NCBI GenBank assembly: GCA_964036045.1
Contig: OZ038378.1
Coordinates: 145,762,001 to 145,826,000 of the forward strand
Length of the DNA: 64,000 nt
Reading direction: 5' to 3'
DNA from: Eutreptiella sp. 'Long Island Sound 2002'
Lineage: Eukaryota; Protista; Euglenida
The position numbers were made by a program, and so were the translations under genes. Within the stretch, counting starts at the first letter, position 1; the number at the start of each line of letters is the position of its first letter. Positions 22,244-50,689 of this stretch are shown here, one piece after another. A model generated the notes under the pieces. The model saw only the letters and a program-made list of their open reading frames with translations. It had not been told where the DNA came from and searched no databases.

Positions 22244-25200
22244 TCACGCCATCTGCGAGAAGTGCTGCGCCGTGTCCGTCAGGAGCACCTCGAAGAAGAA
22301 GTCCGAGAGGGAGTCGACGACGTCGGCCAGGCCGCACTCCCGCTTCATGTCCCACTGCAGCGGGGCTTCCTCCGCCACCTGCGTCCAGTGCAGCTCCTCG
22401 CCGCCGCACGGGGCCGGGGCCATCCACCGCCGCACCCGCCCCCGCACGAAGCCCTCCAGCTCCGCCAGCGTCAGCAGGTCCTCGGAGCGCGCGGCCTCCG
22501 CGGGCAGAGCGCTCCGGAGCCGGTCCCGCTCCTCCCGGCGCTGCTGCCGCCGCTTCCAGTACTCCGTCGTCGGGAGACAGAGCGGGACCGTCTTGGCGGT
22601 GGTGAACTCCGCGGCGGCCTCACGCACGCAGTCGAGGACCAGGGGCTTGTTGATCAGCTCGAAGGCCTGGGAGTAGCAGAACGACATGGCGGAGTTCAGC
22701 GAATCGTCGTCCTCCGTCCGGTCGTTGAGCATGTCCTCGACCGCCCCCGCGAGATCCGCCGGGAGGACGACGCCGTCCGTGCCCTCGACCTGCAGCTCCC
22801 CGGCCTCGCACTTCTTCCGCAGGGCCTCGAACAGGACGGAGACGTACACCACTGCGGCCTCCATCTCCAGCTGCTTGCCGTCGTCGGCCAGGGCGGAGGC
22901 GGCGGCCGAGGAGACGGACCCCGAGTCGTCCTCCAGCTCCTCCATCGACGTGTCCAGGGGCGGCGCGCCGAGGGGGGACGTGGGGGCGGGGGAGGCGTCG
23001 GAGCCGGCGGAGGGGGACGCCGCGGGCTTGTGCGGGGACGGGGCCCCGTCCGCCGGGGCTGCGCCGAGGGGCGGCGGGGGGTGGGCCGCGGTGGGGCTCG
23101 GGCAGAAGTCGACGTCGGGGCGCACCGCCGCCTTCGGCGAGAGGGAGGGCGGGGGGGTGAGCGCGACGGGCTCGCTGCGGGACAGGAACGGGGACGTGGG
23201 GGGCGTGGTCGCGGCGGCGCCGCGGGACGGGGACATGGGGGGGGACGCCAGGGGCCCAAGGCCCAGGGCCTGGGAGCACAGATGGGGGGGGGCGCCCCCG
23301 CCGCGCCCAGACCCCCGGGACGGGGGGGGGCTGGACGGCGGGGGCGGGGCGGCGGGGGCGGCCCCGCCGGACCCGCCGGGGGGCCCGACCCCCGGGCCAC
23401 CCCCGCCGTCGCTGCTGTCGTCGTCGCTCGGCTGGATCCAGTCGTCCTCCGCGTCGTCGACGAGGATGCGGTCCTCCGGGCCGCTGCCGCTGTCGGAGCG
23501 CTGCAGCTGCGGGGGCGTCGAGAGGCCGTCGCCCGACTCGTTGTCCGAGAGCTCGAGGTACGTCGCGCCCTCTTCACTGATGGGGCCCCGGGCGCACACC
23601 AGCCGCTCCAGCGCCTCCATCGTCTCCGGCGGCACCGGGGCCCTGGACACGAACCGGCCGATGTGCTGCGTGATCTGCGACACCGTCGCGCGGTCCTTCC
23701 GGGAGATGCGCGGCGCGGCGCGCGGGCCCGGCCGCGCCGCCTGCCGCCGCAGCTGCGCGAAGATGTCGTCCTCGACGGCGGGCGCGCTGCCCCCCGGAGC
23801 GTCCGCGGCGCTGGAGGCGCTGGAGGGGGCGTGAAGGCGCCGGTGGGAGCCGTCCTCGCTGCCGCTCTCCGCAACGAAGTCGTCGTCGTCGAACGCGTGT
23901 TCGATATGCGCGCGCGGCGCTTGGGGGGCGGCGGGGGCGGCGTCTGCCTCGGGCCGGGCGTGCTCCGCCGCCCAGAGCTCCGCCTGGCGCTCCTCCGCCT
24001 TCTCCGCCTCCACTTGCTCCTGCACGCGCTGCTGCAGGAACGCCATGTGCCGCGCGTGCTGCTCCGCCTCCTGCTGCCGCTGTTGCCGCATCTTCTCGAC
24101 GATGTCCACCGCCACATCCGTCGGGCGTTGACTCTGGCCGGCCGGGGCCATCGGAGGCCCCGCGGACGCCTCCGTGGGGCCCAGCACCGCCGCCAGCGGC
24201 GGATGGTATTGCCCACCGTTCGGTGCCTCCGGGCAATGCTCCGCGCTGCTACTGCCTCCCTCGCGGGGCAAGGGGGAAGCGGAGGCCGGCTCTGCCGCCT
24301 CACCGTCGGCAGCCACGGACACAATGCCCTCGTTTCGGGGTGTGGCGGTGTCGGCTGCATCGGACATTCCTGAGTTCCCGGAGGCGGAGGACGCGGACTC
24401 CATGGCTCGAAGGTCACTGGCAGCGTCCTCCTGCAGGCCTTCTTCCTCGACGACTTCTGAGAATGTGTCAGAGTACTGCTCTTCTTCAGAGTCAGCCTCC
24501 GGACTGTCTGCGGCGGAGCTTGCCATCTTTGACTCTGCTTCTGCCCGTGCCTGCGCTTCTGCCGCAGCAAGGGCCTCTGCCTCTGCCTCTGCCTGTGCCC
24601 TCGCCTCTGCCTCTGCCTGTGCCCTCGCCTCTGCCTCTGCCTGTGCCCTCGCCTCTGCCTCTGCCTGTGCCCTCGCCTCTGCCTCTGCCTGTGCCCTCGC
24701 CTCTGCCTCTGCCTGTGCCCTCGCCTCTGCCTCTGCCTGTGCCCTCGCCTCTGCCTCTGCCTGTGCCCTCGCCTCTGCCTCTGCCTGTGCCCTCGCCTCT
24801 GCCTCTGCCTGTGCCCTCGCCTCTGCCTCTGCCTGTGCCCTCGCCTCTGCCTCTGCCTGTGCCCTCGCCTCTGCCTCTGCCTGTGCCCTCGCCTCTGCCT
24901 CTGCCTGTGCCCTCGCCTCTGCCTCTGCCTGTGCCCTCGCCTCTGCCTCTGCCTGTGCCTCTGCCTCTGCCTCTGCCTGTGCCTCTGCCTCGGCCCGTGC
25001 CTCTGCCTGTGCCTCTGCCTCGGCCCGTGCCTCTGCCTGTGCCTCTGCCTCGGCCCGTGCCTGTGCCTCTGCCTCTGCCTCGGCCCGTGCCTGTGCCTCT
25101 GCCTCGGCCCGTGCCTCTGCCTCTGCCTTCGCTCTTGCCTCGGCCTCGGCCTCTGCCCGCGCCGCTTCCTCTGCCCGCGCCTGCGCCAACGCTTGTGCAC

Positions 25201-28200
25201 GGGCCCCTGTCCCCCCGCCCCATTCGGCCAGCGCCTCCGCCTCCGCCGCAGCCGTTGAGTCTTCGGTGCTAAACTGCGCTTCGGCCTCTGCGCTGGTCTC
25301 CGCCTCCGAGTCGCTTGGGCTGAGGTCCGCGGAATCAACGCCCGGGCGGGCGGGGCTCGGCGGCGAATCGCGTGCCGCGCGGTGCGGCACCGCGGCGAAC
25401 CCGGGGGACGGCCCTGCGGGATCGGAGGCCTCGCTCTCGGAGGCCTCGGAGAGGGCGGAGTGCCCCTCGTGGGGGCAGGAGAGGTCCGACCCGGTGCCGT
25501 CCCCGCGGGGCCCCTGGTCGGCGAGGCCCAAGAGGGAACTGGCGGAGGAGTGGACCGAAGGGACGTCCTCCGCCGCCCCCGAGGCCCGGCCCCCGCCCCT
25601 CGTCCCATACGCCGGGGCCGGGGCCGGCGCCCCCCCCGGGGCCGCGCTCGGGGCCCCGGACGCCCGGGAGCTTCGCAGGTCCGAGGCCGTGAGGCCGGCG
25701 GGCCGACCGGAGCTTTGCAGGTCCGACGCGGTCAGGCCGGGGAGCCCCGTCGCGGAGGGCGAGGCGGCGCTGAGGTCGGCCCCCGGGGGCAGCGCGTGGC
25801 CCCGGAGGTCGCCGGCGCGGGCGCCGCCGCCGCGGTCCAGCGCGGAGGAGGCGGCGAGGGCTGCGGGGTCGTCGGCGCTCTCGATGGACATGAGGGAGTG
25901 GTCCGTCGCCGCGGAGGCCGCGCCCTCAACGGGGTAGTCCAGCGCGAGGCAGCGGGGCCGCAGAGGCTCGGCGGAGGGGTCCGCGGCGCGCGGGGCGGGG
26001 CCCGGGGCCGCGCCAAACCCCGGCGGCGGCTTGGCGGCGAACGCGTCCGGCGGCGCGTGCGGGGCCGGGGCGAGGCCGAGGCCCAGCAGCGTGCGCTCCC
26101 GGGAGGCGTCCGGGCGGAGGGTGGGCGTGGGGGGGTCGGTGGCCACGTCGACCATGTCCGGGCGCCGGGGCCGGCGGCGGCCGGCGGAGGAGTGCCGCGA
26201 CGCGGAGGAGCCGCGGGAGGACGCGGAGGGGCTGTGCCGGCGGTGGTAGGCCTCGTCGCCGCGGAAGAGGTGAGTGGCGAGGAGGCTGATGGCGCTCTCG
26301 GACGCGGGAGTGTCGGACAGGGAGATGCGCCACGGCCGTTGCGGGCCCGGGCCCTCGAGGTCGGGGGCGCCGGGGGCCGCCCGCGCGGGCCACGCGTGGT
26401 CGGCGGAGCTGAGCGGCTGGAAGCACCGCGTGTGGCGCGCGTCCTGCGACGCGTCCGTGGCGGACTCGCTGCAGGAGCAGAGGTGGGACGAGCTGCTGGA
26501 GGTCTGGCTGGTGTCGGCCAGGACGCGATCGAAGCCGTGGACCCCCGGGGCACTGGGGGCGCCGTGCGCCCCGGAGACGTCGCTGCCGGAGGCCGACGGG
26601 GCCGGGTCTGGCACGCGACCGGTCCGGTGTTCGGGGCGGTCGCGCGCGTTCCCGCGGAGCGGGGGAGGCGGACTGCCCTGCAGGAGGTTGCCCTCCGGAT
26701 GGGCCGCACCCTCGGCGTGGCTGAGGGCCGTGGCCATCGCGTACAGCGGAAGGGGGTCCGCCGTGGTCGACGCGTAGTGGACGGCCGCGGCGTCGGGGCC
26801 CGGGCCATGGGGGCCCTGAGGGGGCGGGGGGTGGCGCATGGGGCGGGGGGGCGTGGCCGGGAGGTCCGTGGGTGCGAGCGGTCGGGATGCCGCGGCGTCG
26901 GGCACCGGATGCGCCGGCGCGGCGTTGCCGTTGGGGGACGGGTAGAGGGCGTTGACCTGTGCGTTGAGCTGCTGCAGTTCGTGCTGCTGCGACCGGATCT
27001 GCGACTGGACTTGCGCGACCATGTCATGCAGTGGGCCCTCCTCTTGGTCCCGGCCGCCCGGGTACCGGCTACTGGCCGCCGCCCCGGCATCCCTCCCTCG
27101 CCTCTGGTCCTCCAGTTGCTTGTGACGCCGCTGCTCGTGATCCAGTTGCTCTTTGAGGGTCTCCAGTCGGCGCTCGATCTCCTCGGTCGACACAGACCAC
27201 GTCGATGCAGCCGAGACCGCGGACTGGGGCGACATGGTGCGGAGCGCGGGCGACCGTTTGACGGCGGCGGCGGGGCTCCGCAGCACCGCCGGATCGTTGG
27301 GATTGGGGCCGGTGCGGCCGTGCGGGTCCCACGCTGCAAGGGCCAGCTCGTAAGGGGCCGGGAGCGGGTCCGGCTCCACAAACGTCGTGGAGGACGGGGA
27401 ATAGGTCCGCAGTTCTTGCACCAAATGCTGCAGCCGCACGTAAGGGTCCTCCGGATAGCCGAGGTGGGCCCGGAGGGACGACGGCTCCGGCGGTGGAGGC
27501 AGGACTGCGGGCGGCTCCTGCGGACTCAGTGGGGCCTTTGCCCTTCCGGACCCTGCGTCGAGGCTGGGGCCCGCGCCGTGGTATCTCGCTTCGCCCATCG
27601 GGTCCTGAGGCGCTGCACTCTGTCGGGGGTGTGCGGCCATCGCATCGCTGGCCCGGCCCACCGCACCCGGACCCGGTGCCCCGTACGCCGCCCCAACACC
27701 GGGCCTCAGCAACATCTGCACGCGCGTCAACAGATCCGCCGCCTGTTGCCGCAGCTTGCACAGCCTCTCATCCGCCACGTCGTGGGGCAGAGGAGGCAGG
27801 TCCACCACCTGCAGCATTTGTAGGGTGGATGGGTCAACTGTGGAGCCACGAGGCTGCGGGGCCATGAATGGGGGCGCCGTATGCTGCGGATAGACTGCCG
27901 GCTGCCGGTACTGGTGCACCAGGCTGGAGATTAGCTCACTTTCCGTTTGGGCGGACGAGGACTTGGCCCGGCGCGGGGCGGCGGCCATCGTGCCCACGGT
28001 AAAGGTTGGGTACGGATGCTTCAGACTGATGGGCGGGTGTTGGGGCACCATCTTGACCTTCTTCGTGGCGGCCTTGCGGGTCGGATTGGCACCGCCTTGG
28101 CACCGCTCATCCCTCGCGGCGCTGCGAGCCGAAGCGTTGTGGCGGCGGGTTCGCGTTGCCGTCCCAGCGGCACTGACCTGCCCTTTGGATGCCCGTTCGG

Positions 28201-28444
28201 TGGGAAATGCACGTCCTTGAGGGGCGCCACCTCCAAGCTCCAAGGCCAATTGTGCAGCGACTTTGGCCTTCACCTCTTCGGGTACCAGAGTGTACCTGCC
28301 GCTGTTTGTAGAGTGCTGCAGCTTGTGCCCCGGCATGGGGCCGGATGCTCCTTGGGTCTTGCTGGCAACGTTGCCATGTTGCGTCCTTTTGTGGCCTTGA
28401 GTCGTCAAGGAATGATTCATCGACTTGCCAACTGGACCTTGCAA
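22244..28444 (-). CDS. large low-complexity/coiled-coil protein with DUF4378-like (CEP350/TRM-type) C-terminal domain; putative centrosomal or basal-body scaffold
   Basis: Uninterrupted 2066-codon GC-rich ORF (true start may be the ATG at 27988). C-terminus has [14 protein letters not shown] and [31 protein letters not shown], resembling the LFDCVNE and W...IFE.LL.DT motifs of DUF4378/CEP350. Confidence 0.75.
24580..25140 (-). repeat. coding 24-bp tandem repeat (AEAEARAQ) x15 plus degenerate flanks
   Basis: GCCCTC anchors every 24 bp from 24597 to 24933. Confidence 0.95.
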
Positions 28445-36860: not shown

Positions 36861-37622
36861 TCAGTCGTCGAGCATTGACAGGAGCGCCACCCCGCGCAAA
36901 CACCAGTGGTCCGGTCTGCAATCCGGGGGAGACGGCAGTGCCAGGGTCGTGATGAAGTTGGTGGAGTGCCCCGTCACGTCCAGCGTCCCCACGCGGGCGC
37001 TGGTCCGGTACACCGGGCAGCCGTACCGGTCCGGCGGCGGGGCCTGCGCCGCGAACCGGAGGTGCATCACCGGCATTTCCTGATGCAGCGCGTGCTCCTG
37101 GGGCTCCGCCAGGGCCGCCGCGCGCGCGTCCCACCGGGCCCCCTCCAGGAAGAGGCCGTGGAGGTAAATCCCCGCGTCCGGGCCCCGCGCCACCTCCTCC
37201 GGCCGCTGCGCCAGCACCTCCACGTGCGTCTGCAGGTCGTTGGCCTCCACCTGCGCTCGCTGGGCGTGCGCCCGCATCGCGCCCTCGATGAGCTGCTGCG
37301 GGAACGCGAAGGCGCCGAGCCAATAGGACGCCGGCGGGCCGCGCGCCCACGCCGCCGAGACGCGGCAGCGCTGCAGGAGGTCATGGAACCACGCGCCCAG
37401 GGGCTTGAGGGAGGCGTACGCGACGCGGCGCCACGCGTCCGGGACCCGGCCGTACCAGAGGTCCTCGAGCATCGCGTCCGTGTCCGGGGCCGCGGCCGCG
37501 AGGCCCTCGAGGACGCGGAGGAGGCGCTGCAGCGAGGCACGGATGGCCTCCAGAAGGCGGTTGAGGAACTCGGTCTGGGACCGCAGCGCGCGCGACAGGG
37601 GCCCTGCGGCGCCCTCCGGGAC
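36861..37622 (-). CDS. ART-NACHT-dynein fusion gene, exon 6 (dynein C-terminal domain)
   Basis: Acceptor TTTCCCCAG|GTC; GIYLHGLFLEGARWD, CPVYRTSARVGTLDVTGHSTNF and HWCLRGVALLSMLDD* are typical of axonemal inner-arm-type dynein C-termini. Confidence 0.9.
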   Translation of the reverse strand, partial: VPEGAAGPLSRALRSQTEFLNRLLEAIRASLQRLLRVLEGLAAAAPDTDAMLEDLWYGRVPDAWRRVAYASLKPLGAWFHDLLQRCRVSAAWARGPPASYWLGAFAFPQQLIEGAMRAHAQRAQVEANDLQTHVEVLAQRPEEVARGPDAGIYLHGLFLEGARWDARAAALAEPQEHALHQEMPVMHLRFAAQAPPPDRYGCPVYRTSARVGTLDVTGHSTNFITTLALPSPPDCRPDHWCLRGVALLSMLDD

Positions 37623-38225
37623 CTGGGGAAAGGGGCGGAGGGCGGAAGTAGGGGTAGAGGAAAAGGGGAAAGGGAGGCGTAGAGGTCCGCCAAAGCCGAA
37701 AGGAGGACTAAACCCAGAGCCACGTGGCACGCGCGCCAAAGACACCCCCTGCGCGCGCGCCTCGTGCGCGCCAAAGACAGCCCCTCCGCGCGCGCCTCGT
37801 CGAATAAGGCGCGCAGTCTCGGCCGAACTATGGACGGCGGTCGTCATCCACCCAAACACGCCCCAGTGGAGGTACAAGTAGAGGCAACAGTTGACGAAGG
37901 GATGTGGATGGAGAGCAGGATGCACCTGAACAGGGAAACCTCTAGACGTCCGCATTTTTGGGGCACGAAAGTAAAAGCTGAGCCGGCCGCCAGACAACGG
38001 CGGTTTTCTCATCACCGACGGCGGTTGACTGATCAACCGACAGCGGTTGGCGATTAACCAACAAACTTTGGCTGTTCGCCGCCGGCGGTCGGGGGCTCAC
38101 CGACAACGGTTGGCCAGTAACTGCCGGCGGTTGGCCTGCAACCGCCCGCCCGGGGGCGTCGGCGTTCCTCGGCAAAACGGACAACCGTTGGTGTCCCCAG
38201 GGACCGTCCTGACGCAGAGGCAGAC

Positions 38226-38631
38226 CTGGACCGACCCGTCCAGAGGGTCGGGCAGCCTCGCGAGGAAGTCCTTCGCTTTGGCCGCCACGAAGGCCGCGCT
38301 CTCCACATGTTCGCTTGCCTTGGGCTGCACGGCGACCAGGGCCTGGGCGAGGCGCTGGGACTCCCGCTGCCACACGACGCGCGCCCCGTTCGCGCCCAGC
38401 CCCAGGGCCGCGGGCGGGTCGTCGGCGGGCAGCTGCGACACGTGCGCCCGCAGGCGGTCGAGGTCGCAGCCCTCGACGGGGCCCGGGGGGTAGTACTGCC
38501 GGGCCGGGGCCCACTCGTAGCCGCCCGCCAGGCACTCGGGCCGCAGGAGGTGCGCGAGCAGCGTGTTCAGTGTGCGGCGGTCGATGTGGTCCGTGAGGTG
38601 GCCCCCCAGCACCAACTCGCCGAGGACGTAC
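38226..38631 (-). CDS. ART-NACHT-dynein fusion gene, exon 5 (AAA6 lid region)
   Basis: Acceptor TTCTCAG|G; (R)YVLGELVLGGHLTDHIDRRTL matches dynein LRYL.GE..YGG.VTD.WDRR; phase-0 donor CCAG|GTCTGC. Confidence 0.9.
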
Positions 38632-39545
38632 CTGAGAACACCCGCGGGGGCAGGGCTTGGCGCGAAGGGGCGGGGGTGCGATCGGGGAAATTCCAGAGCG
38701 GTTGCAGAGCGGCCGCAGGGGATGTGAAGCGGTTGGGGGGCGGTTACTGGCGGTTGGAAATGCGTTGGTTGGGGCGTCGGGGTATGGGAATTCCTTTGGG
38801 GTCAAGTCAGGGCCGCAGTGTTGGGGGGGAGGGGGTAATCCCCCCCTCCTTGAAGCGATTCCCTGCGCGGGGGGGGGGGGGTCATGGGTGGGGGGGTATA
38901 TGAACCAAATACCACAGGAATCGCGAGCAGTTCGCGCACTGCGGTCGATTTCACTGCCGCCCAACGTGGCATTTGGGTGTACGTTCGGCGAAGGTGGGCT
39001 TCTTCAGCATAACGTGGCGGTGTTTGGTGGTCTGGTTAGGATTTGGGGCAGTCGCGATGAAAACCGTCAACACTGGCTGTTGACCCCGGGTTTTCCCTTC
39101 GTGGAGCCCCCCAACCCCCATTGGCTTGTCTGACCCTGAAACCCACTTTTTTGTGCCTTCGGGCCCCCAAATAGAGGGGGCGGGGGTCCCAAGACCTCCC
39201 CCAAAGCGCACCCGCTGGCCTGGGTAGGGGGGCGAGAAGGGGGGGGGGGGTCTGGTATAAGCCGCACACACGCCCGCGGGGACTGCCAACGAGAAGAAAC
39301 CTTTTTGCGGAAACCGAACCGCTCGACATCTGGGGATTGTACAAGGCAATGCACGCAGACCTTTGGGGCCTGAACACGCCCTTCAGCCCCCCATTTGGAG
39401 GCAGGAGATCGCATGTTGGCGAGCCCACTTTTGCGTGCAAAACGGCAAATCCTCAGAAGATGCGGCGATTGAAGGCCAGCACACAGCTTTGGCCAGAAAA
39501 CATGACTGCGCATATCAATTGGGGGGGCGCTGAAGTGCAGTTCTA

Positions 39546-39857: not shown

Positions 39858-40286
39858 CGAGACACGCAACCCCCGCGCGGGGGGGGGGGGGGTATTCTTT
39901 CGGACTTCGGGGGCATTTTTGGATTCTCTGTTTCATTTGGAGTATTTTGAATATACACGAGTCCGTGGGGTGAGATCTTCCTTCCCAATTTCACGTGTCA
40001 CATGGCTCAACAGCAGTTTCCGGGCGCCATTGGCCCCCACATTGCCTGTTCTCCATCGCTGGCCACTAGTCTGGGCTGGAAGGGGGGGGGGGGGCAAGAG
40101 GAGAGGGGGGGTCCGGTCTCACACGCAAGTGCTCCCCGGTGGATGGCACACAGCAATGCACGCAGACCCTGAGGGCCTGACACTCCCAATCGGAGGCTCG
40201 AGATCGCACGCAAAATGGCAAATCCTCAGAGGCCGCGCCGCCGAGGCTTGAGCCGGCAACCCACGGACCTCCCCGGGACCACGTAC

Positions 40287-43200
40287 CTGAGGGCGTTCAG
40301 CCCGTCCTCCGAGCCGCGTTGCTGGTCCCACTGCGGGCTCTGCCGGCGGAGGGACTCGAGGTGCATGAGGGCGGCGCGGGCCCCGCTGGCGGCGTCCTCG
40401 CACCGGAACTCGCCCACCGCGACCCAGCCCAACGGCCCGAACCGGCGCCGCTGGTCCGCAATGGCGTGGCACAGCACGACGGCGAAGATCAGCTGCTTCT
40501 CCCGGGCCGACCGCGCGTTCCACAGTTCATCCGGCGCGAGGGCCGCGAAGCGCTGCAGGAGCGCGCCGCGGACCCCCCGCGGGGGCTCGTCCGGGTACCG
40601 CAGGCTCAGCCGCAGGATGCCGATCGGGAACTGGGCCGTGTGGAGGACACTGCAGAAGAGACGGAAATCGCGATGCACCGCGCGACTGCTCTGGAGGTCG
40701 GCGACCGCGCGCTCCAAGACCGGCAGCCCCGCGGGGCTGCTCTCGCAGTTCTGGAGGAACACCCAGTGCCCCGCGCCCATCGCCGCGGGGAGCGCCGCGG
40801 CGCCGGGGCCCAGGAACTGCTCCATGTCCATCAGCGTCACGCGGTCCGCCATCGCCTTCTCGCGGGCGAAGGCCTCGAAGGCGGCCCGGCAGTCGGACCC
40901 GGCGGCCATCACGAAGACGATGGGCACGGCCGCCGCGGAGTACCGGAAGAGCTCCGCCAGAGGGACGGCGGGCGGCTGCAGCACCGCGGGGCCCAGGACC
41001 TCCAAAACCAGCTGCCGGAGCCCCAGCGCGAGCGACCCGGGGCGGAGCACCCGCGACAGGACCACCCGCTGCCACACCCCAAGCCCCAGCCCCCCCGGGG
41101 CCGGGGCCGCGGGGGGGCACTCCGCCTGCGCCCAGGCCTCCCACTCGCGGGGCCGCCCCGCCACCGCCCGGTCCACGCCCTCGAACCCCGCGAGCGCCCC
41201 GAGCGCCCGCAGCTGCGCCCACTGCCGGCGGGAGAGCCAGGGCGGGTGGCCGGCCCCGTCGCCCTCCCCCCCGTCCGGCCGCAGGAAGAACCCCCAGACC
41301 GGCCCCGAGATGGCGCCCTCGCGCGCGAGGACCTCGACGGCGAGCAGCACCGCCAGCAGCGCCCGGTCCGGCTCGTGGAGGCCGCGGCTGACGACGGCGT
41401 GGACGCGGGCGGTCGCGCCGGCCACGAGGGCCGGGACCCGCTCCGCACCGCCGGCCGGCGGGCCGAGGCCCTGCAGGGCCTTGCGGAACAGCCGCGCGAA
41501 CAGCTGCACGGAGCCGTGGTACATGTGGTCCAGGGCGGTCATCTTGGCGAGCGCGCGGTACATCAGGGCCCCCCGGCGGGCCACGGGGCGGTACTCCTCC
41601 GCGGCGGCCTCGGCCTCCGCCGCCACCGCCTGCAGCACGTCCGCCTGCCGCTGGGTCTCCTCGTACGTCTGCTGCGTGTGGGCGAGCGCGTGCGCCACGG
41701 CCTCGTCCTCGACCATCTCCCCGACCCGCGTCGCCAGCAGCGACAGCATCGTGTCCTCGAGCTCGCGCAGCTCCTGCCGGAGCCCGGGGTCGTGCGGCTC
41801 CGCCTCGTCGGCCGCCCCCGTCTCGTGCCGGACGACGGCCCCGAGCAGCTGGTCCTCGAGGGCCTCCGGGCCCACCGCGAAGTTGACGAGCGAGAGGTAC
41901 CCCTGGAGCGCGGCGGTGCAGTGGGGGTTGGCGGCGGTGGTGGTGAGGTACAGCCTGAAGCCCGGGTGGTAGTCCACCGCCGTGTCCCCGAGCTGCACCA
42001 TCACGCGGCCCAGGGTCTCGTAGACCCGCTTCTTGAGGAGCCCGTGCAGCGCCACCGGGACGGCCTCCGCGTCGCCCTCCAACAGAAACGGGAGCCCGGT
42101 CTCGATGCTCCTCCGGAGGGCGGCCGGCATGTCCGGGTCGGACGCGCGCGCGACCTGCAGGCCGCTCCCGCGCTCCATGTTCATGATCCACAGCCGGGCC
42201 TGCTGCTGCGGGTCGATCGCCAGGCTCCAGCTCGAGCTTTGGGTCAGGAGGACGGCGTTGTCCCGGGAGGTGCGGTCGGTGGGGAGGCCGTGCCGGCCCC
42301 ACTCCACGACCGCCAGCGGGTCCACCAACGCCCGCAGATCGAACGCCTCCTCGACCTGGACCCCCAGTTCGCCGCACTGCCGCGCCCAGTCCCGCAGCAG
42401 GTCCCGCCGGTAGACGTGGTCGAAGGGGCCGAGGTACGCGACGGCGCCCGCCGCCAGGAGCATGTCCCCTTTGAGCCGCTGCCGGGCCAGCCCGACGGTC
42501 CGCAGGCGCGCCTCCCACCGGCTCTTCTCGGGCGCGAGGGCCCGGACCAGGGCCGCCGCGCGCTCCCAACGCCCGTCGGCTCCGCCGGGGCCCGGGGCCC
42601 CGGCGGTGCCCTGCGCGACCATCTCCAGAGCGGTCAGCTGGTTCAGCCCCTGGCGGTACTTCTCCTGCTGCGCGTCCATGGCCTTGCCCCGCTCGTCCAG
42701 CAGCCGCACGTACGTGTCGAGCAGGCGGAGGAAGTGCCGGTTGGTCGTGTAGACCGGCCGCCTCAGGGCCTGGGAGAACTCCGCGGCCTTGCCCCGCACG
42801 GAGGCGTGCATGGCCGCGCACACGCGGCAGGCGACGGCGATGAACTCCGGGGCCTCGGCCTCCACGGCCCCGAGGACGTGCTCCGCGACGCGCAGCAGCG
42901 CCGGGCGGGACCACGGCTCGAGCCACACGATGTTCACGAGCTGCGAGAGGGCGGGGAACGTGCGGAAGCGCGCGCGGAGCTGGGCGCTCGAGGGCTGCAG
43001 CGCCAGGACGACGTGCACGTTCCTGCGGCACCGCTCTTCGAAGCGGGCGAGGTACGCGTCACCGGCGCTGGGCTCCGTCTGCCCCGATTTCCGGTCCATT
43101 GCACCGAAGAGAGTCGTGACAAGGTTGACGTCGTCGGGCTGCAGACCGCCCGCGAGCTGCGCGGTGGTCAGGAAATTGTTGATGTCGCTCAGAAACGCCT

Positions 43201-46200
43201 CCTCGACGATGTGCGTCTCCTCCATGAACACCACCACCTCGCGATCGTGGCACCCGGCCTCCATCGCCGCCGCCTTGAGGTCGCGGCGGAACTCCGCCAG
43301 CGCGTACCCGCTCGAAACCGCCCGGATCTCGCGCAGCTCCAGCCCCTTCATGAAGGCCGCCAGCCGCGTGAACAGCCGGCACCCGGACCCCGGCTCGCCC
43401 ACCAACAGGGCGCTGCCCCCGGGGAGACGGAGGACGCGGGCCACCTTGATCAGGTGGAGGACGGCTTCCTCGAGGAGGATCATGTTCAGCTGCTGGTGCG
43501 AGGCCGTGACGTGCATGTTGTAGGAGGCCAGGACGCCGGTCAGGGTATCGTAGATGGGGCCCAGGGCCTCGGCCTCCCGATAGTACGTGGTGCTCGCGGA
43601 GGTGCGGTCGAGGAAGTCGCAGAACACCAGGCGCTCGTAGCCGGGGGCCCAGGCGGTGGCGAAGTGCTGCTCCACGAGCGGCGGCAGGGCGCGCCACCAC
43701 CACCGCCGGTCCTCGTCCGCGCACAGGGGGTCGTGGAACACGCGGGTGCATTCGTGGATCCACAGCCTCAGGAGCGAGTCCGCCGTGCTGCAGTGGGCGG
43801 GCTGCACGGAATGCATCCCCTGGAACACGCGCTTGATCTGGTGGACGGAGTACGTGTAGTGGGGCTTGAGAGGCGTGGGGCGCATGGCATCGATCAGGGC
43901 CTCATAGACACCGATGGTCGCGCGCACCATCGCCGTGACCAGCCCCGCGACCTCCGGGGCGAAATTCGCGAAATGCCCTCCGTTGACCACCTGGAAGACC
44001 CGGTTCAGCGACGCCGGGCCCAAGGGCGCGGACGCGAGGCAGTGGAATCGGGACACGAGGCGCGTCGGGAGCACGCTGCGGCACCCACCTGGCGGAGCGC
44101 ACGCGGCTATGAGGGACAGCCCCTGGATCGTTCGCCAGTGCAGCCGGTCACAATCGTAGAACCCGCCATCGCCACGAATCTGCCGCAGGAGCTCAATTGA
44201 AGGGCACGTCCCAGAGCGCTCAAGGGCGGGCAAATTGACGTCATCCACGAATATCAACGTCCTCCGGCCCTGAGGCCCTGCGAGGACGTCCTCGGAAATC
44301 CAGTGCATGCGCGCCTCGATCCAACGCTGCAGATCCCCAGAGGAGGTGCGCAGGCCCATTTTGAAGTGGAAGGCCGCGTGCGCGAGCGTCGGGAGCAGGG
44401 CGGACACGGCGGTGGTCTTGCCGCCCGTAGGACCGTTGATAAGGACGCCGCGGTCCACCCGCAGGAGGTTGGTGAGGAGCGTGTGGAATATCACCGTCTC
44501 GACCGTGGGCACGAACGCGCGACTGTCCGTTGCGGCACTCAGTTCGCCGAGCGGGGGGAGCAGCTCCGTCCACCGGGCGAAGCTCATGGACTCGGGCCGG
44601 AAGCACCAGTCGTACACCGTGTGTTCCTCCGGAAAGGCGTCGCACACCGCCTGCACGACGGGCAGCAGCGCGGCGTGGCACTTCGCACGATCTGCGGCAA
44701 CGACGTTGCCGCACAGCGACCACACGAAGCTCAACGCAAGATACGCGTCGAAGACCCGCGCACGATCTGCGGACCGGCCGCTGCCATCCGCCGGTTCAGA
44801 CGCCGGTGAACCACACGCCGAGGTCAGCGGGCTTGCGGCCGGGCCGCTGGAGCGTCGCGCGCGCACGACGGCATCGAGGCTGCGGGGGCTGCCGCTTTCA
44901 TCCTCGTCCTCACTCGCCAGGAACGACGCCACCATAATGAGCAGCGATTCCACACGCTGCGCCTCCACCGTGGCGATGTCCTCCTTCGTGTTGGCCCGCA
45001 CAAACGCCAGCACGGGGTCGCAGTGCTCCGTGAGGACCTCCCAGGCCCGCCCCTGCAACCACCGACCGCCGTACGTGCCGGCCAGTGCCTCGCCACGGCA
45101 CCGGGCGATGGTGCGCCAGCCCTCCAAGTGGCTGGGTTCGAGACTCAGGACGCCGCAGCGGGAGATCAAGGCCGGAGTGGCCAGGGCTGTGCTGTCGGTC
45201 TCGAGGATGATGCGCATCGTACTCGGCATTTTGAGGGCCTCCCCCGTCCACAAGGTCAGGCACTTGTTGTCGTCGAGCATCGTCATCAGACCCGAGGCCC
45301 ACGACGGGTCCGGGCTGCCGTCCAGCACGATCCACGTGGCGGTGTCCGCGCTGGCGACGCCCTGGCGCACGCGATGCGCCAGCAGCCCGTCGCGCCAGGC
45401 GCCCGTCGCGGGGTCCGACCGCCCGTACAGCTCCGCGCAGGCGACCGCCGAGGGGTTGATGGCGCACGCCGCCACCCCGCGGCCGGCGTCGGCGGCGTGC
45501 AGCTCCGGGAACGCGCGCGCCACGGCCCTCCATGCCTCGGTCTTGCCGCTCATGGAGGGGCCCACGAGGACTAGCCCGTGCCGGACGAGGAGCGTGTTGT
45601 GCAGGGCCACGAGCTTCGCCACGAAGTCCGGCGGGGCGGCGCGGCCGTGGCGGTCCAGCGCGCGCCGGAGCACCGTCTCCAGCGCGGTGCCCTGCGCCGC
45701 CTCCGCGACGCGAACCCCCGGGAAGCACGACCTCAGGATCTCTCCGAAGACGGCCACGTCGGCGTCGACGAGGATCGGGAGCCACTGCCGGCGCAGCGCC
45801 TGGACGACCTGGGCCGCCTCGTCCTCCCCCGGCGCCGCCTGGCGCTGCTGCCCGGCCACTTTGCAGCACGCCTTGACCGCCCGCATCCCGAAGTCGTAGT
45901 GGTGCTGCCGGGACAACTGCACCGCGCTCATCCGCAGGACCTGGACTAGCCCCCGGGCGAGGGCGGCGGCGCGGCGGTAGCCCTCGCAGTACAAATTGTA
46001 CTTCGCGACGACCTCGTAGTCCGGGAGCACCATGGCGCAGGGGCGCAGCACGGCCTTCAGGGCCTCCGGCACCTCCGTGCCGCCCGCGCACCCGGGGTTG
46101 ATCGTGGCGAACAGGCCGAACGAGGCCTTGAGGGGGAGCCGCCGCCCGTCGAACCAGAGCAGCGCCTGCCGCGCGCGCAGGGCGCTGTAGACGGCGGTCG

Positions 46201-47872
46201 CCAGCGCGGCGAACGGGAACAGCACGTCGATGGCGATCCGGTTGAACTGGTCGAAGATGACCCACCCCCCCATCTGCGCGGCGGCGGCGGTCAGCCGCGA
46301 CAGCACCGCGAGCGCCATCCCGTCGTGGGCGTTGACGACGAAGAAGGGCCGGCCCGCGAGCTGCGCGAGGCCCTTCGCGGTCTCGGTCTTGCCCGTGCCC
46401 GCGGGGCCCACCATTCCCACGCCCATACCGGACTGCACGGCCTGCGCGAGGGCCAGCCAGGCGCGGCCGGTGACCGGCGTCCGGACCAGCAGCGCCCCGG
46501 ATCCGTCGTTGTACTCGTACCCGTGCGCCAGGGAGACGGAGCCGAGGTCCAGGAACACGGCCCCCTCGTGCAGGCGGTAGCGCGCCTGCGACACCCACTG
46601 GAACGACTCCGCCGTCGCGCCCTCGGCCCGGGACGCTTTGGCGCGCGCCGCGTGATCCCCCAACACGTTGATCAGGGCGTACAGGACACGCCGCTGCAAC
46701 GCCGTGAGCCCCGTCCGGGTGCGGTCCACCACCTCCTCGAACCGGTTCTGGAGGGTGCCGCAGGCCGCCGCCAACGCGCCGGGGTCCGCCGCCGCGTTGG
46801 CGAACGCGGCCTCCATCGTCTGCACGTACCCGATCGCGGTGGCCACCAGGACGCACTGGAGCGGGAACGACCAGTACCACAGCGGGCGCGGCATGGTCGC
46901 GTGCGCCTCCACGGCAGCGACCACTTGCTGGCGGACGGTTTGCCGGATGGCGTCCTCCAAGCAATTGGTCCAGGAGTCCAGCGCTTCGCCCTTGCACTGG
47001 ACGGCGTCCACAAACGTCACCGTCTCCCCGATTTTGCTACGCACCCCGCGAATGGCCTCCGGCGAGCCCACATCGGCCGCCGGCTCAGACATGAGATCGT
47101 GAACATCGGGAAAGAGGCCCACAACGGGCCGCACGTCCCCGTCGAGGAGCGCGTACAAGTCGGTGCTGGACACGCACCAGAGGCGCGGGGAGGCCCGCTG
47201 CTTGTCCTCGAGGAACGAGTCGTGGAAGGCCCGGCTTGCCTCCATAACGCACCGCGCGTCCTGCAGAAGGGCCGGCAGCCCTGCGGGCGCGCTGAGTTGG
47301 GCCACGTTCGCGGTGTAGCGCGCGCGCGCGTTGAGGGTGCAGAGCTGCGCGGCGGCGCCCGCGAAGGCCTTGGCCTCGGCCGGGCACTGCCGCTGTATCA
47401 CGGCCATGTCGAAGAATTCGTGCAGGGCCATCCAGTGGGACTGCACCGCCTGCCACTCTGCGACCACGCGCTGCATGAGCTCAAGCCGCTCGATCAGCGC
47501 GTCCGCGCGCGGCCGCATCGTCTCGGTCAGCAGCGGCGACGCGCGGCACGCGCGCGCGGTCATCAGGTTGTCCTCCAGTCCGGCGGTGACGGCCTCCCAC
47601 CCGGAGACCGTGTACCAGTCCCCCGCAGCGCCACGAAGCGGGTGGGTCTGGACCTCCAGGGCCTGGCACGCCTCCCCCGCCCGGGACAGGGACGTCGCGA
47701 GGTCCTGCTCTTTGGTGGCCGCCGCCGACTGCTCGTCGACCAGGCCCTTGTGCTCTGCGATGTGGCACGCCCACAAGTCCTGCAGCGTGAACGGGTCGTC
47801 GGCGGAGAACGGCGCCTGCAACCGCGTCAAGATCTGGGCCCAGTGCTTCTTCTGCAGGGCCCTGTTGCCCAC
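40287..47872 (-). CDS. ART-NACHT-dynein fusion gene, exon 4 (DHC_N2/linker, AAA1-AAA6; stalk deleted)
   Basis: 7586-nt open exon: GPAGTGKTETAK (AAA1), GPSMSGKT (AAA2), FVDDVNLP..IELLRQ (AAA3), ALLVGEPGSG (AAA4), GDMLLAAGAVAYLGPF and AIDPQQQA (AAA5), HWVFLQNC (AAA6). Confidence 0.95.
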
Positions 47873-48373
47873 CTGCATCGAAAGGGCCGCGAATCACGTG
47901 CAAAGAGTACCCACGTCCTTGTGTAAAGGGGGTGCGGCAGGGGTGGATGTAGTGAGGGGGGGGAGGGCAGGTCTCAAAGCGCTCTACACATGCACGTCCT
48001 GGTATGCATATGCAGCAATGTCCGGCAGTTCCACAAGATCATTGGTATGATACACGTGTGCTACCATACAATTGTCTGCACCTGATGGCCTTTGTTTTGT
48101 CAACACAACCGTGTTTGTATGCTACAGTACAGTGAGGTGGGGAGGGCGGGGGTTTGCAGAAGGGGGACATTTGTGCGCGCGCCTCGATTCCCCCTTCCGG
48201 GCAGAACGGCTTGGAGCTCCATACGCATTGCCCGCTTTGGAGGTCCAGCATCGATGGGGGGGGCGGGGGGTATTGGGCGGCAGTATCAGTGTTCGGTTCG
48301 CTTTATTTTTGACTGCATTTGGGGTCGGTGCTCTTTTGGATCGGGCTCCGTGTTTGGGGGGTTGGTGCCACAC

Positions 48374-48841
48374 CTGCATCAAGATCGGGAGGTACGCCTT
48401 CCCGTCGCGGATGGAGGCCAACAGGAGCCGGACCAAGGGCTCGTCGTGCGTCATCTCGTCCTGCATCATCATCTGCAACTCAAAGGCCCTCTGATAGTGC
48501 GCCCCCACGCCGTCGCTCACGCTCCGCACGTCCAGTCCCGTCACGGGCGCGGTGAGCCACAGCCGCTGCTCCCGGCGCCAGGACGCCAGCAGCGCCCACA
48601 CGGCGCTCCGGTGCGTGTGCCGCTTCTGAATGGCCTGGAGGGTGGCCTGGAGGGCCGCGTGCTCCTCGGCGCCCTCGAGCACGTCGCCCAGCAGCGTGAT
48701 GCTGTTGGCCGCCCGTAGGGCCTGGGCCCGCGCCCCGTTGTGGGACGCCTCGAGGGTCCGCAGCAGCGCCTCCCGGACCCCCGTCAGGTCCTCCCCACCG
48801 CCCTTGAGCATCCGGTAGATCTGGCGGAAATACCGCCGGAC
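48374..48841 (-). CDS. ART-NACHT-dynein fusion gene, exon 3 (NACHT tail into start of DHC_N2)
   Basis: Acceptor TTTCCCTCGCAG|GTC, donor ATGCAG|GTGTGG, 156 codons, phase 0 at both ends. AVWALLASW...WLTAPVTGLDV...IRDGKAYLPILMQ joins VGNRALQKKHW, the dynein LP....L.N.AL..RHW motif. Confidence 0.8.
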
Positions 48842-49282
48842 CTGCGAGGGAAACGGAGATTGCGTCCGGAAACAAGCGGGCGTTGTCTTACGTAGGTCGC
48901 GGGCTCCAGGGGATCGATCCACTCGAGGGGCCACCAAAAGCGGGGATTGTGAGCTCGTATCCCCAGCTCGAGGGGCCACCACTGTCACTTTTTTTTTCAA
49001 ACGCGCCCTACCGCAAAAGAACAAATACGCGCACCACAACCAGCGGGGCCTTAAGAGAAAAAAAAAAGCGTCCCTGAACGGCAGTTTTGCAAAAAGACCA
49101 CGTGTAGCTGATGTGCTCAACCATGGTTGGTGGTGATTGGCGGTTGGCGGTTGGTCGCCGCTGGCGGTTGGCGGCGGTGGGCGGTTGGTGGTCCCTTGGG
49201 GCGATCCTTGAGGGCGGTCCCCCCCCCCCAAAAAAACATCCAGTTCCTACAGGACCCCCCCTGACCACAACAGACATCGGAC

Positions 49283-50656
49283 CTGCTGGTCCTCGTGCAG
49301 CTGGATCTCCCCCAGGCTCTTGACGCTGCGGCGCCTGATGTGGTGCAGCAGGTAATGCGCCACGAGGTACTCCTGCAGGCTCTTGTGGCGGAAGCTGTAC
49401 GTCGCCTCCGGCGTGAAGTTGGCGACGCGCAGGGGGCAGCTCCGGAACAGGCGGTCCTCGCACAGGGCCCCCACGGTCCCGTGGGTCATGCCCCGCCGGT
49501 GCAGCGTCCAGGCCAGCGCCCCCGCGTACGCCACGCACTCCGGGATCTGCGCGGCCGCGTGCCCCTTCAGGCAGAACCAGCCCCGGATCCACTGCTCGTA
49601 CAAGTGGCCCTCGCTGCGGAACGTGTCCGCGTCGCGGCGGTTCTGGCAGTGCAGGTCCATGGCCATGAACAACTGGAACGGGTTGGCGAGGACCTTCGCG
49701 ATGGGGCAGCCCTGGATGATGCCCAGCACCTCCGTGGTCTCGGGGCTGGGCCCCGCGCACTCCGCGGCCTCCTCCGGCGCCTCCCGGTCCTCCGGCGTCG
49801 CCGCGTCGCCGCGCTGCGCGCGCGACCCCGCGTGCATCTGTCGGATGCGGCAATCCACGTACTGCGCCATTTGCCGGTGGTTGAAGGGCAGCAGGAACAG
49901 GGACTGGAAATCGTGGCCCATGCAGTTGCCGAACTTGTGCATGGCCTCGACGCGGCACGTCACGATCAGTTTCACACTCTGCCACTCCTCGAAGGCGTTG
50001 AGGGCCATCCACGTGCGCGCGGGCGGCTCGTCGCGGTGGTCCACCTCGTCGAGGCTGTCAAGGACCAGGACCACATTGCGCAGCCGGAGCTCCGCCATCG
50101 CGCCATCCGCGAACCCGAACGCGGACTGGAGGTAATCGACGATACCGTTGGGGTCGAAGACGGTCGCGCGCCCGTCGCGCTTCACGGAGGGCAGGGACAC
50201 GAACAGCCACACCCACCCGTCCCGCTCGCAGTCCTTGGCCAAATGCAGTGCGCAGGTGGTCTTGCCCATGCCCGCCTGCGCGGCAATCAGCAGCACGCTG
50301 TTCTGGCTCCGCAGCAACGCCGTGACCTCCTCATCCAGCGGGACCTGCGTGACGGAACTGCGGTAGCGTTTGGCCAGCGGCGGGACGTAGTTCTGCAGCA
50401 GGTTGTCGTAGATGAACCCGATCTGAGACAGGGCGTTCAGGTGCAGGTGGAGGGGCAGGGCCGCCGAGCCGGACTTGAACGTGATGATGTTGAAGTTGAG
50501 GGAGAGCATCTGCAGGATCGAGGCCGGGACCGCCGAGCACACCTCCAGCTCCAGGTTGGCGCTGTGCAGGAACTCCATCTCCTCAGGGAAAACGGACGCG
50601 AAGAACACGGCCTTGGCGGACTGGGACAGGACCATGCAGTAGGTCCCCTTCGTGAC
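49283..50656 (-). CDS. ART-NACHT-dynein fusion gene, exon 2 (ART catalytic end plus NACHT/STAND NTPase)
   Basis: SVFPEEMEFL (ART E-x-E); Walker A AQAGMGKTT, Walker B VLVLDSLDEV, KLIVTCR, LLPFN, LANPFQL, YSFRHKSLQEYLVAHYL (NACHT winged helix); 458 codons, phase 0. Confidence 0.85.
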
Positions 50657-50689
50657 CTGCATGGTGCATTTGGTAAACCCAGTCCCTCA

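What the first reader, a model, noticed from the sequence alone, without database searches (positions are those of the whole stretch)
46230..46410. AAA1 Walker B carries a natural E-to-Q substitution (FDQFNR)
Seen: Walker A GPAGTGKT is intact, but Walker B reads VIFDQFNRI (CAG codon at 46249-46247). Known: dyneins have FDEFNR, and E-to-Q at this site is the standard engineered mutation that blocks hydrolysis and traps ATP at the main catalytic site. Inference: the ring is an ATP-binding pseudo-ATPase locked in one conformation, consistent with a scaffold or sensor role.
Basis: partly seen in the sequence, partly recalled or inferred. Interest (0 to 1): 0.75.

Follow-up and report, generated by a model that had tools for sequence, protein, structure and literature searches.

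The report
Dynein ring with dead main ATPase
A euglenid gene encodes a dynein motor ring whose main ATP-burning site carries, naturally, the glutamate-to-glutamine change that laboratories use to stop hydrolysis. Together with a missing stalk and two damaged side sites, this marks it as a non-motile "pseudo-motor", a kind only recently described in animals.

Summary
Codon 46249-46247 (minus strand) is CAG. It aligns without ambiguity to the catalytic Glu of FDEFNR in solved dyneins. Assembled contigs of two public runs show the same letters with no differences.

All roughly 400 other dyneins fetched have E there, except one unrelated outer-arm-like clade found by a metagenome pattern scan.

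The ATP-contacting residues of AAA1 are all kept:
- Walker A (GPAGTGKT)
- Walker B Asp
- sensor-I Asn
- sensor-II Arg
- the Arg finger contributed by AAA2

The catalytic Glu, the sensor-I loop "backdoor" Tyr and its neighbouring Arg are lost. The AAA3 P-loop has a one-residue deletion, the AAA4 P-loop has lost its basic residue, and the stalk is absent.

The 2550-codon exon is open, with GC3 0.935, and it splices in frame, so this is not old decay.

No orthologue turned up in about 15 billion public proteins, with one stated gap in search coverage, so conservation of Q could not be tested. No RNA evidence was obtained.

"Locked" and "sensor" are inference.

Non-motile dyneins are already known (DNAHX, DNHD1), so I class this as a new variant of a known kind. 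The same scan has already reported this gene's missing stalk and NACHT fusion.

The parts
46247..46249 (-). CAG codon, Q544, at the Walker B catalytic-glutamate position of AAA1
   Evidence: Sequence; aligned to E of FDEFNR in solved dyneins and 11 canonical dyneins; no differences in contigs of runs X1 and X3.
46238..46255 (-). AAA1 Walker B, FDQFNR (aa 542-547); the Mg-binding Asp543 is kept
   Evidence: beta strand WVIFD in the AF2 model.
46385..46408 (-). AAA1 Walker A (P-loop), GPAGTGKT (aa 491-498), identical to canonical dyneins
46079..46102 (-). AAA1 sensor-I strand and loop, INPGCAGG (aa 593-600). Sensor-I Asn and Pro are kept. The 'backdoor' Tyr is changed to Cys (Y597C) and the following Arg to Gly (R600G); canonical dyneins read MNPGYAGR.
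   Evidence: alignment. The role of the Tyr in phosphate release comes from bioRxiv 10.1101/2025.01.18.633724.
45872..45889 (-). AAA1 sensor-II region, GMRAVK (aa 664-669); the Arg is kept
   Evidence: Naming this Arg as sensor II rests on my knowledge of dynein structures.
45539..45562 (-). AAA2 Walker A, GPSMSGKT (aa 773-780), intact
45152..45166 (-). AAA2 ISRCG (aa 905-909); this Arg is the finger that completes the AAA1 site, and it is kept
   Evidence: canonical VSRCG. Calling it the Arg finger is by analogy with the MoxR and dynein AAA_5 family, from my own knowledge.
44414..44434 (-). AAA3 P-loop, GPTG-GKT (aa 1149-1155), one residue shorter than GPTGVGK[ST] in all 11 relatives
43373..43390 (-). 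AAA4 P-loop, GSGCRL (aa 1497-1502); the canonical form is GSG[RK]QS, so the basic residue is replaced by Cys
40287..47872 (-). Main dynein exon: linker, AAA1-AAA4, a roughly 35-aa remnant in place of the stalk and microtubule-binding domain, AAA5 and AAA6. It is open throughout, with GC3 0.935.
   Evidence: Pfam hits. tblastn of E. gracilis EG_transcript_17 gives one frame, with its residues 2565-2840 missing. Splice sites.
47873..48372 (-). GT-AG intron upstream of the main exon, flanked by the 10-bp direct repeat GATGCAGGTG. Splicing joins ...LPILMQ to VGNRAL in frame.
   Evidence: High-copy repeat inside it at 47967-48126.
48371..48646 (-). Upstream exon segment encoding the start of the dynein linker (DHC_N2 positions 1-85)
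49247..50662 (-). NACHT NTPase ORF upstream on the same strand. Walker A (AGMGKT) and Walker B (LVLDSLDE) are intact.
   Evidence: Physical joining to the dynein part is not shown by RNA.
36867..38741 (-). Two downstream exons carrying the rest of AAA6 and the dynein C-terminal domain, through to the last residues of the canonical protein
   Evidence: tblastn; Pfam Dynein_C 1.4e-72.

Best explanation
The substitution is real. It sits in a maintained coding exon of a highly diverged, single-copy derivative of a DNAH6-type inner-arm dynein heavy chain. AAA1 keeps every residue that holds ATP and Mg: the P-loop, the Walker B Asp, the sensor-I Asn, the sensor-II Arg and the Arg finger from AAA2. 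It has lost the residues that carry out and complete hydrolysis: the catalytic Glu (now Gln) and the sensor-I loop Tyr and Arg that gate phosphate release. The AAA3 and AAA4 P-loops are damaged, the stalk and microtubule-binding domain are absent, and the tail is replaced by upstream NACHT-type sequence. The most likely working model is a non-motile dynein ring that binds ATP at AAA1, and at the always-bound AAA2, as a structural ligand with little or no turnover. Such a ring would sit mainly in the closed, ATP-type conformation and serve as a large static domain of the upstream NTPase protein rather than as a motor. Shown here: the sequence state, its rarity, the coding integrity, and the pattern of kept and lost residues. 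Inferred: nucleotide binding, the block of hydrolysis (by analogy with engineered E-to-Q dyneins), the conformational preference, and any scaffold or sensor role.
For: The sequence and alignment place Q544 at the catalytic Glu. Contigs from two runs agree. The engineered E-to-Q change in AAA1 virtually abolishes dynein ATPase (PMC4359366). All 12 pocket residues I listed are kept, against 61% retention of invariant columns in AAA1 (0.61^12 is about 0.003, a post hoc figure). In contrast, E544, Y597 and R600 are lost. The AAA3 and AAA4 P-loops are altered. The stalk is missing, at 275 residues of the E. gracilis relative, with only a faint Pfam MT trace. Coding is maintained: there are 2550 codons with no stop or frameshift and one tblastn frame over 7.5 kb. 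GC1/2/3 are 0.72/0.50/0.935, and 615 single-base changes would create a stop, so an intact frame limits neutral drift to under about 0.015 substitutions per site at the 95% level. Splice junctions are in frame, and changed invariant sites are biased towards conservative replacements (0 of 5000 random draws reach the observed score). There is published precedent: DNAHX is a non-motile dynein whose AAA1 holds ATP, and DNHD1 lacks the catalytic Walker B residues.
Against: There is no biochemical evidence of any kind. No RNA run holding the locus was identified, and no orthologue is available to show that Q is conserved. The branch is about seven times longer than that of the canonical E. gracilis relative (1.70 against 0.23). 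AAA1 retains invariant columns no better than the other modules, so E-to-Q could be one hit of general relaxation rather than a selected 'trap'. The adenine-side motif TPLTDRCY is changed to TPVTGRAW. The AF2 model has pLDDT below 50 at the start of the P-loop and in the sensor-I loop, so loss of nucleotide binding is not excluded. The conservative-replacement bias is partly expected from the genetic code alone.
Confidence: 0.6

Rival explanations
1. Neutral decay. The gene is a recently dead or dying duplicate, and E-to-Q is one of many unselected lesions with no functional meaning.
For: No orthologue and no close paralogue were found in about 15 billion public proteins. No RNA holder was found. 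The branch is very long. Of the aligned invariant columns, 150 of 428 are changed. Several nucleotide sites are damaged.
Against: The frame is open for 2550 codons in a single frame, although 615 possible single-base changes would create a stop. That bounds any neutral phase to under about 1.5% divergence, far too little to account for the roughly 65% protein divergence. GC3 is 0.935 against GC2 0.50. Splice junctions are in frame, and the downstream exons are colinear and complete to the canonical C-terminus. All 12 pocket residues are kept. The NACHT motifs are intact.
Confidence: 0.13
2. Slow switch rather than dead site. Gln leaves a low residual hydrolysis rate, so AAA1 acts as a slow timer or nucleotide-dependent switch, as in many regulatory P-loop NTPases, instead of being permanently ATP-bound.
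For: The binding pocket, sensor II and Arg finger are all kept, which would be unnecessary for a purely structural ligand. The upstream NACHT is itself a switch NTPase with intact motifs.
Against: The E-to-Q change virtually abolishes ATPase in yeast dynein. The phosphate-release Tyr is also lost here. The outputs of a dynein switch are gone or damaged: the stalk is absent and AAA3 is altered.
Confidence: 0.15
3. Empty pocket. AAA1 no longer binds nucleotide at all, and the conserved P-loop residues persist only for folding. The ring would be a nucleotide-free scaffold.
For: The N-loop motif TPLTDRCY is changed at four positions. The AF2 model has low confidence at the start of the P-loop and in the sensor-I loop. 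Many AAA1 invariants are changed (46 of 119).
Against: All eight P-loop residues, the Walker B Asp, the sensor-I Asn, the sensor-II Arg and the trans Arg finger are retained while their surroundings diverge. DNAHX, with a more degenerate AAA1, still holds ATP.
Confidence: 0.1
4. Assembly or sequencing error at the codon; the true base gives GAG.
For: None found. The only weakness is that both supporting runs come from one study, which may be the source of the assembly.
Against: Contigs of two runs from two samples (depth 8.5 and 42.6) match with zero differences over kilobases around the codon, and no alternative letter is listed there.
Confidence: 0.02

Closest known systems
Engineered AAA1 Walker B E-to-Q dynein (yeast Dyn1 E1849Q and its Dictyostelium equivalent)
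   Same: The same residue changes to the same amino acid, with the rest of the AAA1 pocket intact. The laboratory mutant binds ATP but its ATPase is virtually abolished (PMC4359366).
   Different: This one is natural. It also has changes in the sensor-I loop (Y597C, R600G), altered AAA3 and AAA4 P-loops, no stalk or microtubule-binding domain, and no tail. It is therefore not a motor frozen mid-cycle but a ring that has left the motor cycle altogether.
DNAHX, the non-motile dynein heavy chain of sea urchin sperm (bioRxiv 10.1101/2025.01.18.633724)
   Same: It is a dynein heavy chain that is no longer a motor. Its AAA1 is not hydrolytic and holds ATP, its sensor-I loop has lost the phosphate 'backdoor' residues, and its microtubule binding is disabled.
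   Different: DNAHX keeps its Walker B. Its changes are Walker A Thr to Val, sensor-II Arg to Lys and insertions. It keeps its stalk (disrupted by insertions) and its tail, dimerises, and descends from the outer-arm alpha chain in animals. The protein here keeps Walker A and sensor II, loses the Walker B Glu, has the stalk deleted and the tail replaced, and groups with DNAH6-type inner-arm dyneins of Discoba.
DNHD1, the 'orphan' dynein heavy chain of vertebrates
   Same: It is reported to lack the catalytic Walker B residues of AAA1 and is proposed to be non-motile.
   Different: DNHD1 is an ancient, widely conserved ciliary protein with many insertions. No sequence relationship closer than the general dynein family is seen here, and I did not align DNHD1 myself.
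Uncharacterised outer-arm-like dynein clade P0288, P0289 and P0290 (metagenome contig QFZN01005177.1 and transcriptomes)
   Same: It has natural FDQF at the AAA1 Walker B, shared by three orthologues at 75-77% identity. This shows that the change can persist across species.
   Different: It is only 25% identical to the window protein and of outer-arm type. It is full length with tail and stalk, and its sensor-I NPGY is lost altogether. Its sister P0291 still has E.
Canonical DNAH6-type single-headed inner-arm dyneins (E. gracilis EG_transcript_17, Chlamydomonas DHC2 8glv_Lc)
   Same: These are the best sequence relatives, at 34-40% identity. Domain order is the same from linker to C-terminal domain.
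   Different: They have FDEFNR, GYAGR, full P-loops at AAA3 and AAA4, a stalk with microtubule-binding domain, and an N-terminal tail.

Membership tests
Dynein heavy chain (motor-domain architecture) | Linker followed by six AAA+ modules in the canonical order, plus the C-terminal domain | tested here: met
   Pfam hits to DHC_N2, AAA_6, AAA_5, AAA_7, AAA_8, AAA_9 and Dynein_heavy lie in order on the main exon. Dynein_C lies in a downstream exon. The locus is colinear with E. gracilis EG_transcript_17 residues 708-3979.
Dynein heavy chain (functional motor) | Catalytic Walker B Asp-Glu in AAA1 | tested here: not met
   It reads DQ at aa 543-544.
Dynein heavy chain (functional motor) | Coiled-coil stalk with a microtubule-binding domain between AAA4 and AAA5 | tested here: not met
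   Residues 2565-2840 of the E. gracilis relative have no counterpart. The Pfam MT match is 15.8 bits, below the cut-off.
Dynein heavy chain (functional motor) | N-terminal tail (DHC_N1) for dimerisation and cargo or axoneme docking | tested here: not met
   There is no DHC_N1 hit. Sequence upstream of the linker is a NACHT ORF.
Non-motile 'pseudo-motor' dyneins (functional class of DNAHX and DNHD1) | AAA1 hydrolysis motifs degenerate in an otherwise maintained dynein ring | tested here: met
   E544Q, Y597C and R600G sit in an open, codon-biased exon that splices in frame.
Non-motile 'pseudo-motor' dyneins (functional class of DNAHX and DNHD1) | AAA1 occupied by unhydrolysed ATP and the ring held in one state | not testable with these tools
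   This needs biochemistry or cryo-EM. It has been shown only for DNAHX.
DNAHX subfamily (by descent) | Branches from the outer-arm alpha heavy chain; found in animals with external fertilisation | tested here: not met
   A FastTree run on 1846 columns places the window protein in the DNAH6-type inner-arm clade next to Andalucia and Euglenozoa, not with the outer-arm dyneins. Long-branch uncertainty applies.
NLR-like STAND protein (NACHT NTPase with a C-terminal sensor domain) | NACHT domain with intact Walker A and Walker B | tested here: met
   Pfam NACHT 4.5e-08, with AGMGKT and LVLDSLDE.
NLR-like STAND protein (NACHT NTPase with a C-terminal sensor domain) | NACHT and the dynein ring on a single polypeptide | tested here: inconclusive
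   They share a strand, lie adjacent, and the one junction I examined is in frame. The junction between the NACHT ORF and the linker exon was not resolved, and no RNA evidence exists.

The most novel reading that the evidence does not exclude
The ring is an ATP-latched dynein 'dummy' built into a NACHT (NLR-like) receptor. In this reading it is an integrated decoy or sensing platform that mimics the host's inner-arm or cytoplasmic dynein for pathogen factors that target dynein. The natural Walker B trap holds the ring in one defined state, so that only ligand binding, and not ATP turnover, changes its shape and releases the NACHT switch.
Probability: 0.12. Interest if true: 0.85.

Novelty: new variant of a known kind. 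Interest (0 to 1): 0.5.

Why it matters
If the protein is expressed, it is a natural experiment. Evolution has made the same single change that dynein laboratories use to separate ATP binding from hydrolysis, kept the rest of the pocket, and removed the motor's output parts. That would extend the recently recognised class of non-motile dyneins (DNAHX, DNHD1) to protists, to the inner-arm lineage and to a non-ciliary architecture. It would also offer a compact stalkless ring for studying what an ATP-bound dynein ring does when it is not a motor. On its own, without expression data or orthologues, it remains a well-documented sequence state with an inferred consequence.

Tried and rejected
1. 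Orthologue test for conservation of Q. I ran a word-indexed search with the whole exon (candidates 1400-4460 aa), another with a 287-aa AAA1 piece (158-502 aa), and an exhaustive HMMER search of 1.84 billion representatives. Apart from the window's own protein, nothing exceeds 42% identity, so dN/dS could not be computed. One gap remains: relatives above 50% identity and 503-1399 aa or over 4460 aa long would be hidden inside the query's own 50% cluster and fall outside the length windows.

2. RNA evidence. The one run search found no holder on record as RNA. The contigs laid include intron sequence and look like DNA, and no splice joint for the 47873-48372 intron was seen. Expression is unresolved.

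3. Runs X4 and X5, which carry other organism labels, hold identical short pieces but do not cover the codon. They give no information on E/Q polymorphism.

4. The metagenome pattern scan for W-x-x-F-D-Q-F-N-R-I gave 13 loci. Twelve are chance matches in non-coding or unrelated frames. One, L013, is a real dynein, but it is not an orthologue (25% identity).

5. I looked up two top hits, P0140 and P0145, hoping to find the canonical parent gene in the same assembly. One is not on record and the other belongs to a different genome.

6. Literature search for a Euglena NACHT-dynein fusion returned nothing.

7. I rejected the idea that the long antisense ORFs across the site (for example 46325-47926 on the plus strand) are genes. 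With GC3 at 0.935, stop-poor alternative frames are expected: frames with only 4-13 stops over 7.6 kb occur.

All analysis was done exon by exon.

Full report
**The observation.** The minus strand of the window carries a 2550-codon open frame, 40226-47878. Pfam places these domains on it in order: the dynein linker (DHC_N2), AAA_6 (the hydrolytic AAA1 site, E 7e-89), AAA_5, AAA_7, AAA_8, AAA_9 and Dynein_heavy. Only a sub-threshold trace of the microtubule-binding stalk is present. Walker A reads GPAGTGKT at 46408-46385, and Walker B reads FDQFNR at 46255-46238.

A search against solved structures aligns 'wvifdqfnri' to 'wacfdefnri' of Chlamydomonas, trypanosome and other dyneins, with no gaps nearby. 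A multiple alignment with 11 canonical relatives gives the same column. An AlphaFold2 model of residues 430-1110 (mean pLDDT 76) has WVIFD as a strand with Q544 directly after it. The model superposes on dynein AAA1-AAA2 structures with TM 0.61-0.70.

**The base call.** Only Logan contigs were available, not raw reads. Contigs of two runs from two samples of one study cover the codon with no differences over 3.6 kb and 1.8 kb, at word depths 8.5 and 42.6, and no alternative letter is listed at the site. This excludes a consensus error, but these runs may be the data behind the assembly. Two runs under other organism labels hold identical short pieces but do not reach the codon.

**How unusual is Q here?**
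- All 283 scorable dyneins from the first three searches have Glu.
- A pattern scan of metagenome contigs for W-x-x-F-D-Q-F-N-R-I returned twelve chance matches and one real dynein.
- That protein (P0288, 4510 aa) has a tail and a stalk, is of outer-arm type, and is only 25% identical to the window protein.
- Two orthologues at 75-77% identity share FDQF, while a 67% relative keeps LDEF.
- So natural E-to-Q at this site is rare but not unique, and it can persist across species.

**The rest of the ATP machinery.**
- AAA1, kept: the P-loop (8 of 8 residues), the Walker B Asp, the sensor-I Asn and Pro, the Arg of GMRAVK (sensor II) and the Arg of AAA2's SRCG motif, which completes the AAA1 site.
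- AAA1, lost: besides E544, the Tyr and Arg of the sensor-I loop (GYAGR became GCAGG). A recent preprint identifies that Tyr as the gate for phosphate release and reports its loss in the non-motile dynein DNAHX.
- AAA2: the P-loop is intact, as in all dyneins.
- AAA3: the P-loop is one residue short (GPTG-GKT).
- AAA4: the P-loop reads GSGCRL where relatives have GSG[RK]QS.
- Stalk: 275 residues of the E. gracilis relative, covering the stalk and microtubule-binding domain, have no counterpart.
- Tail: there is no tail domain. The upstream ORF is a NACHT NTPase with intact Walker A and B.

**Is the pattern more than general divergence?** Among 490 columns that are at least 97% invariant in 56 canonical relatives, the protein keeps 278, changes 150 and lacks 62. 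The missing ones fall mostly in the stalk or in other exons. Retention in AAA1 is 61%, no better than elsewhere. Losing any one invariant residue is therefore unremarkable. Keeping all 12 binding residues at that background has a probability of about 0.003, although this is a post hoc choice of residues, while the three hydrolysis and product-release residues are all lost. That asymmetry is the main sequence argument for "binds but does not hydrolyse".

**Is the gene alive?**
- The exon has no stop and a single tblastn frame over 7.5 kb.
- GC by codon position is 0.72/0.50/0.935, and 615 possible single-base changes would create a stop. An intact frame therefore bounds any neutral phase to under about 0.015 substitutions per site, a tiny fraction of the divergence seen.
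- The upstream intron (47873-48372) is GT-AG and joins LPILMQ to VGNRAL in frame. The exon ends at a CAG|GTACGT donor site at 40287.
- Two downstream exons complete the protein to the canonical C-terminus.
- Replacements at changed invariant sites are biased towards conservative ones (0 of 5000 random draws reach the observed score), though the genetic code contributes to that bias.
- Against this: no RNA holder was found; the branch is about seven times longer than that of the canonical E. gracilis relative; and no orthologue or close paralogue appears in the public protein collections, apart from the search gap set out under the searches that failed.

**Origin.** The best relatives are DNAH6-type single-headed inner-arm dyneins, led by the E. 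gracilis, other euglenid and kinetoplastid sequences at 31-35% identity. A tree on 1846 columns places the protein as a long branch beside Andalucia and Euglenozoa inside that clade. It is not related by descent to DNAHX, which derives from the outer-arm alpha chain, or to the FDQF clade found here.

**Mechanism.** The engineered E-to-Q change in AAA1 virtually abolishes dynein ATPase (PMC4359366). DNAHX shows that a degenerate AAA1 can hold ATP permanently in a ring fixed in the pre-powerstroke state, and DNHD1 is reported to lack the catalytic Walker B residues. By analogy, I consider it most likely (about 0.6) that this ring binds ATP at AAA1 and AAA2 as a structural ligand, turns it over little or not at all, cannot transmit anything to a microtubule, and serves as a static domain. 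Nucleotide binding, a "locked" conformation and a scaffold or sensor role are inferences.

The rivals are:
- recent neutral decay (0.13);
- a slow switch with residual hydrolysis (0.15);
- a pocket that no longer binds nucleotide (0.10), supported by changes in the TPLTDRCY motif and low model confidence at the P-loop and sensor-I loop;
- a sequencing error (0.02).

**Relation to earlier notes of this scan.** The stalk deletion and the NACHT context of this same gene were already reported (s1-206503), and I re-derived the stalk gap and the NACHT ORF independently. The direct repeats at intron ends (s1-206693) hold for the one intron I read. Notes on another dynein with a dismantled AAA1 (s1-222773) and another stalkless module (s1-203062) elsewhere in this genome suggest that dynein pseudo-motors may recur in this organism. 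I could not reach those sequences.

**Verdict.** This is a new variant of a known kind (non-motile dynein heavy chains). Its distinguishing features are the exact laboratory trap substitution in an otherwise intact AAA1 pocket, and its setting in a stalkless, tail-less ring next to a NACHT NTPase. Interest is moderate (0.5), limited by the lack of expression data, orthologues and biochemistry.

Noticed in passing
L013:75-12251 (+), metagenome contig QFZN01005177.1; proteins P0288, P0289, P0290, P0291: An uncharacterised clade of full-length, outer-arm-type dynein heavy chains. Three orthologues (75-77% identity) carry FDQF at the AAA1 Walker B and have lost the sensor-I NPGY motif, while a 67% relative still has LDEF. 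This looks like a protist analogue of the non-motile dyneins described in animals, of independent origin.
   Followed up: partly
window 47967-48126 and 49111-49220: Two short stretches inside introns of the gene are extremely abundant in the sequencing runs (summed contig word depth up to about 5.9e5, against about 40 for the exons), with many variant copies and loose ends. These are high-copy repeat families. The second is a GGTTGG-type simple repeat.
   Followed up: no
window 47873-48372 (-): The GT-AG intron is flanked by a 10-bp direct repeat, GATGCAGGTG, that spans both splice sites. The exact boundary is therefore ambiguous, and the intron looks like an insertion with a target-site duplication (introner-like).
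   Followed up: partly
window 44414-44434 (-) and 43373-43390 (-): The AAA3 P-loop has a one-residue deletion (GPTG-GKT) and the AAA4 P-loop has Cys in place of the conserved Lys/Arg (GSGCRL). The regulatory nucleotide sites are damaged as well as AAA1.
   Followed up: yes
window 22244-28444 (-): A 2066-codon ORF in a 74% GC block. Its only Pfam hit is a sub-threshold match to the repetitive Fibrinogen_BP family (46 bits against a cut-off of 50). It may be a low-complexity repeat protein or a compositional ORF.
   Followed up: no
window 40319-44200 (+) and other antisense frames of the dynein exon: Antisense and off-frame ORFs of up to about 1300 codons overlap the exon. With GC3 at 0.935 these are compositional by-products, not genes.
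   Followed up: yes
window 49247-49231 region (-): The NACHT ORF ends in a stop at 49247, just upstream of the simple repeat, so at least one more intron must lie between NACHT and the linker exon. This does not fit easily with the earlier first-reader note that the NACHT-to-dynein transition lies within a single exon.
   Followed up: no
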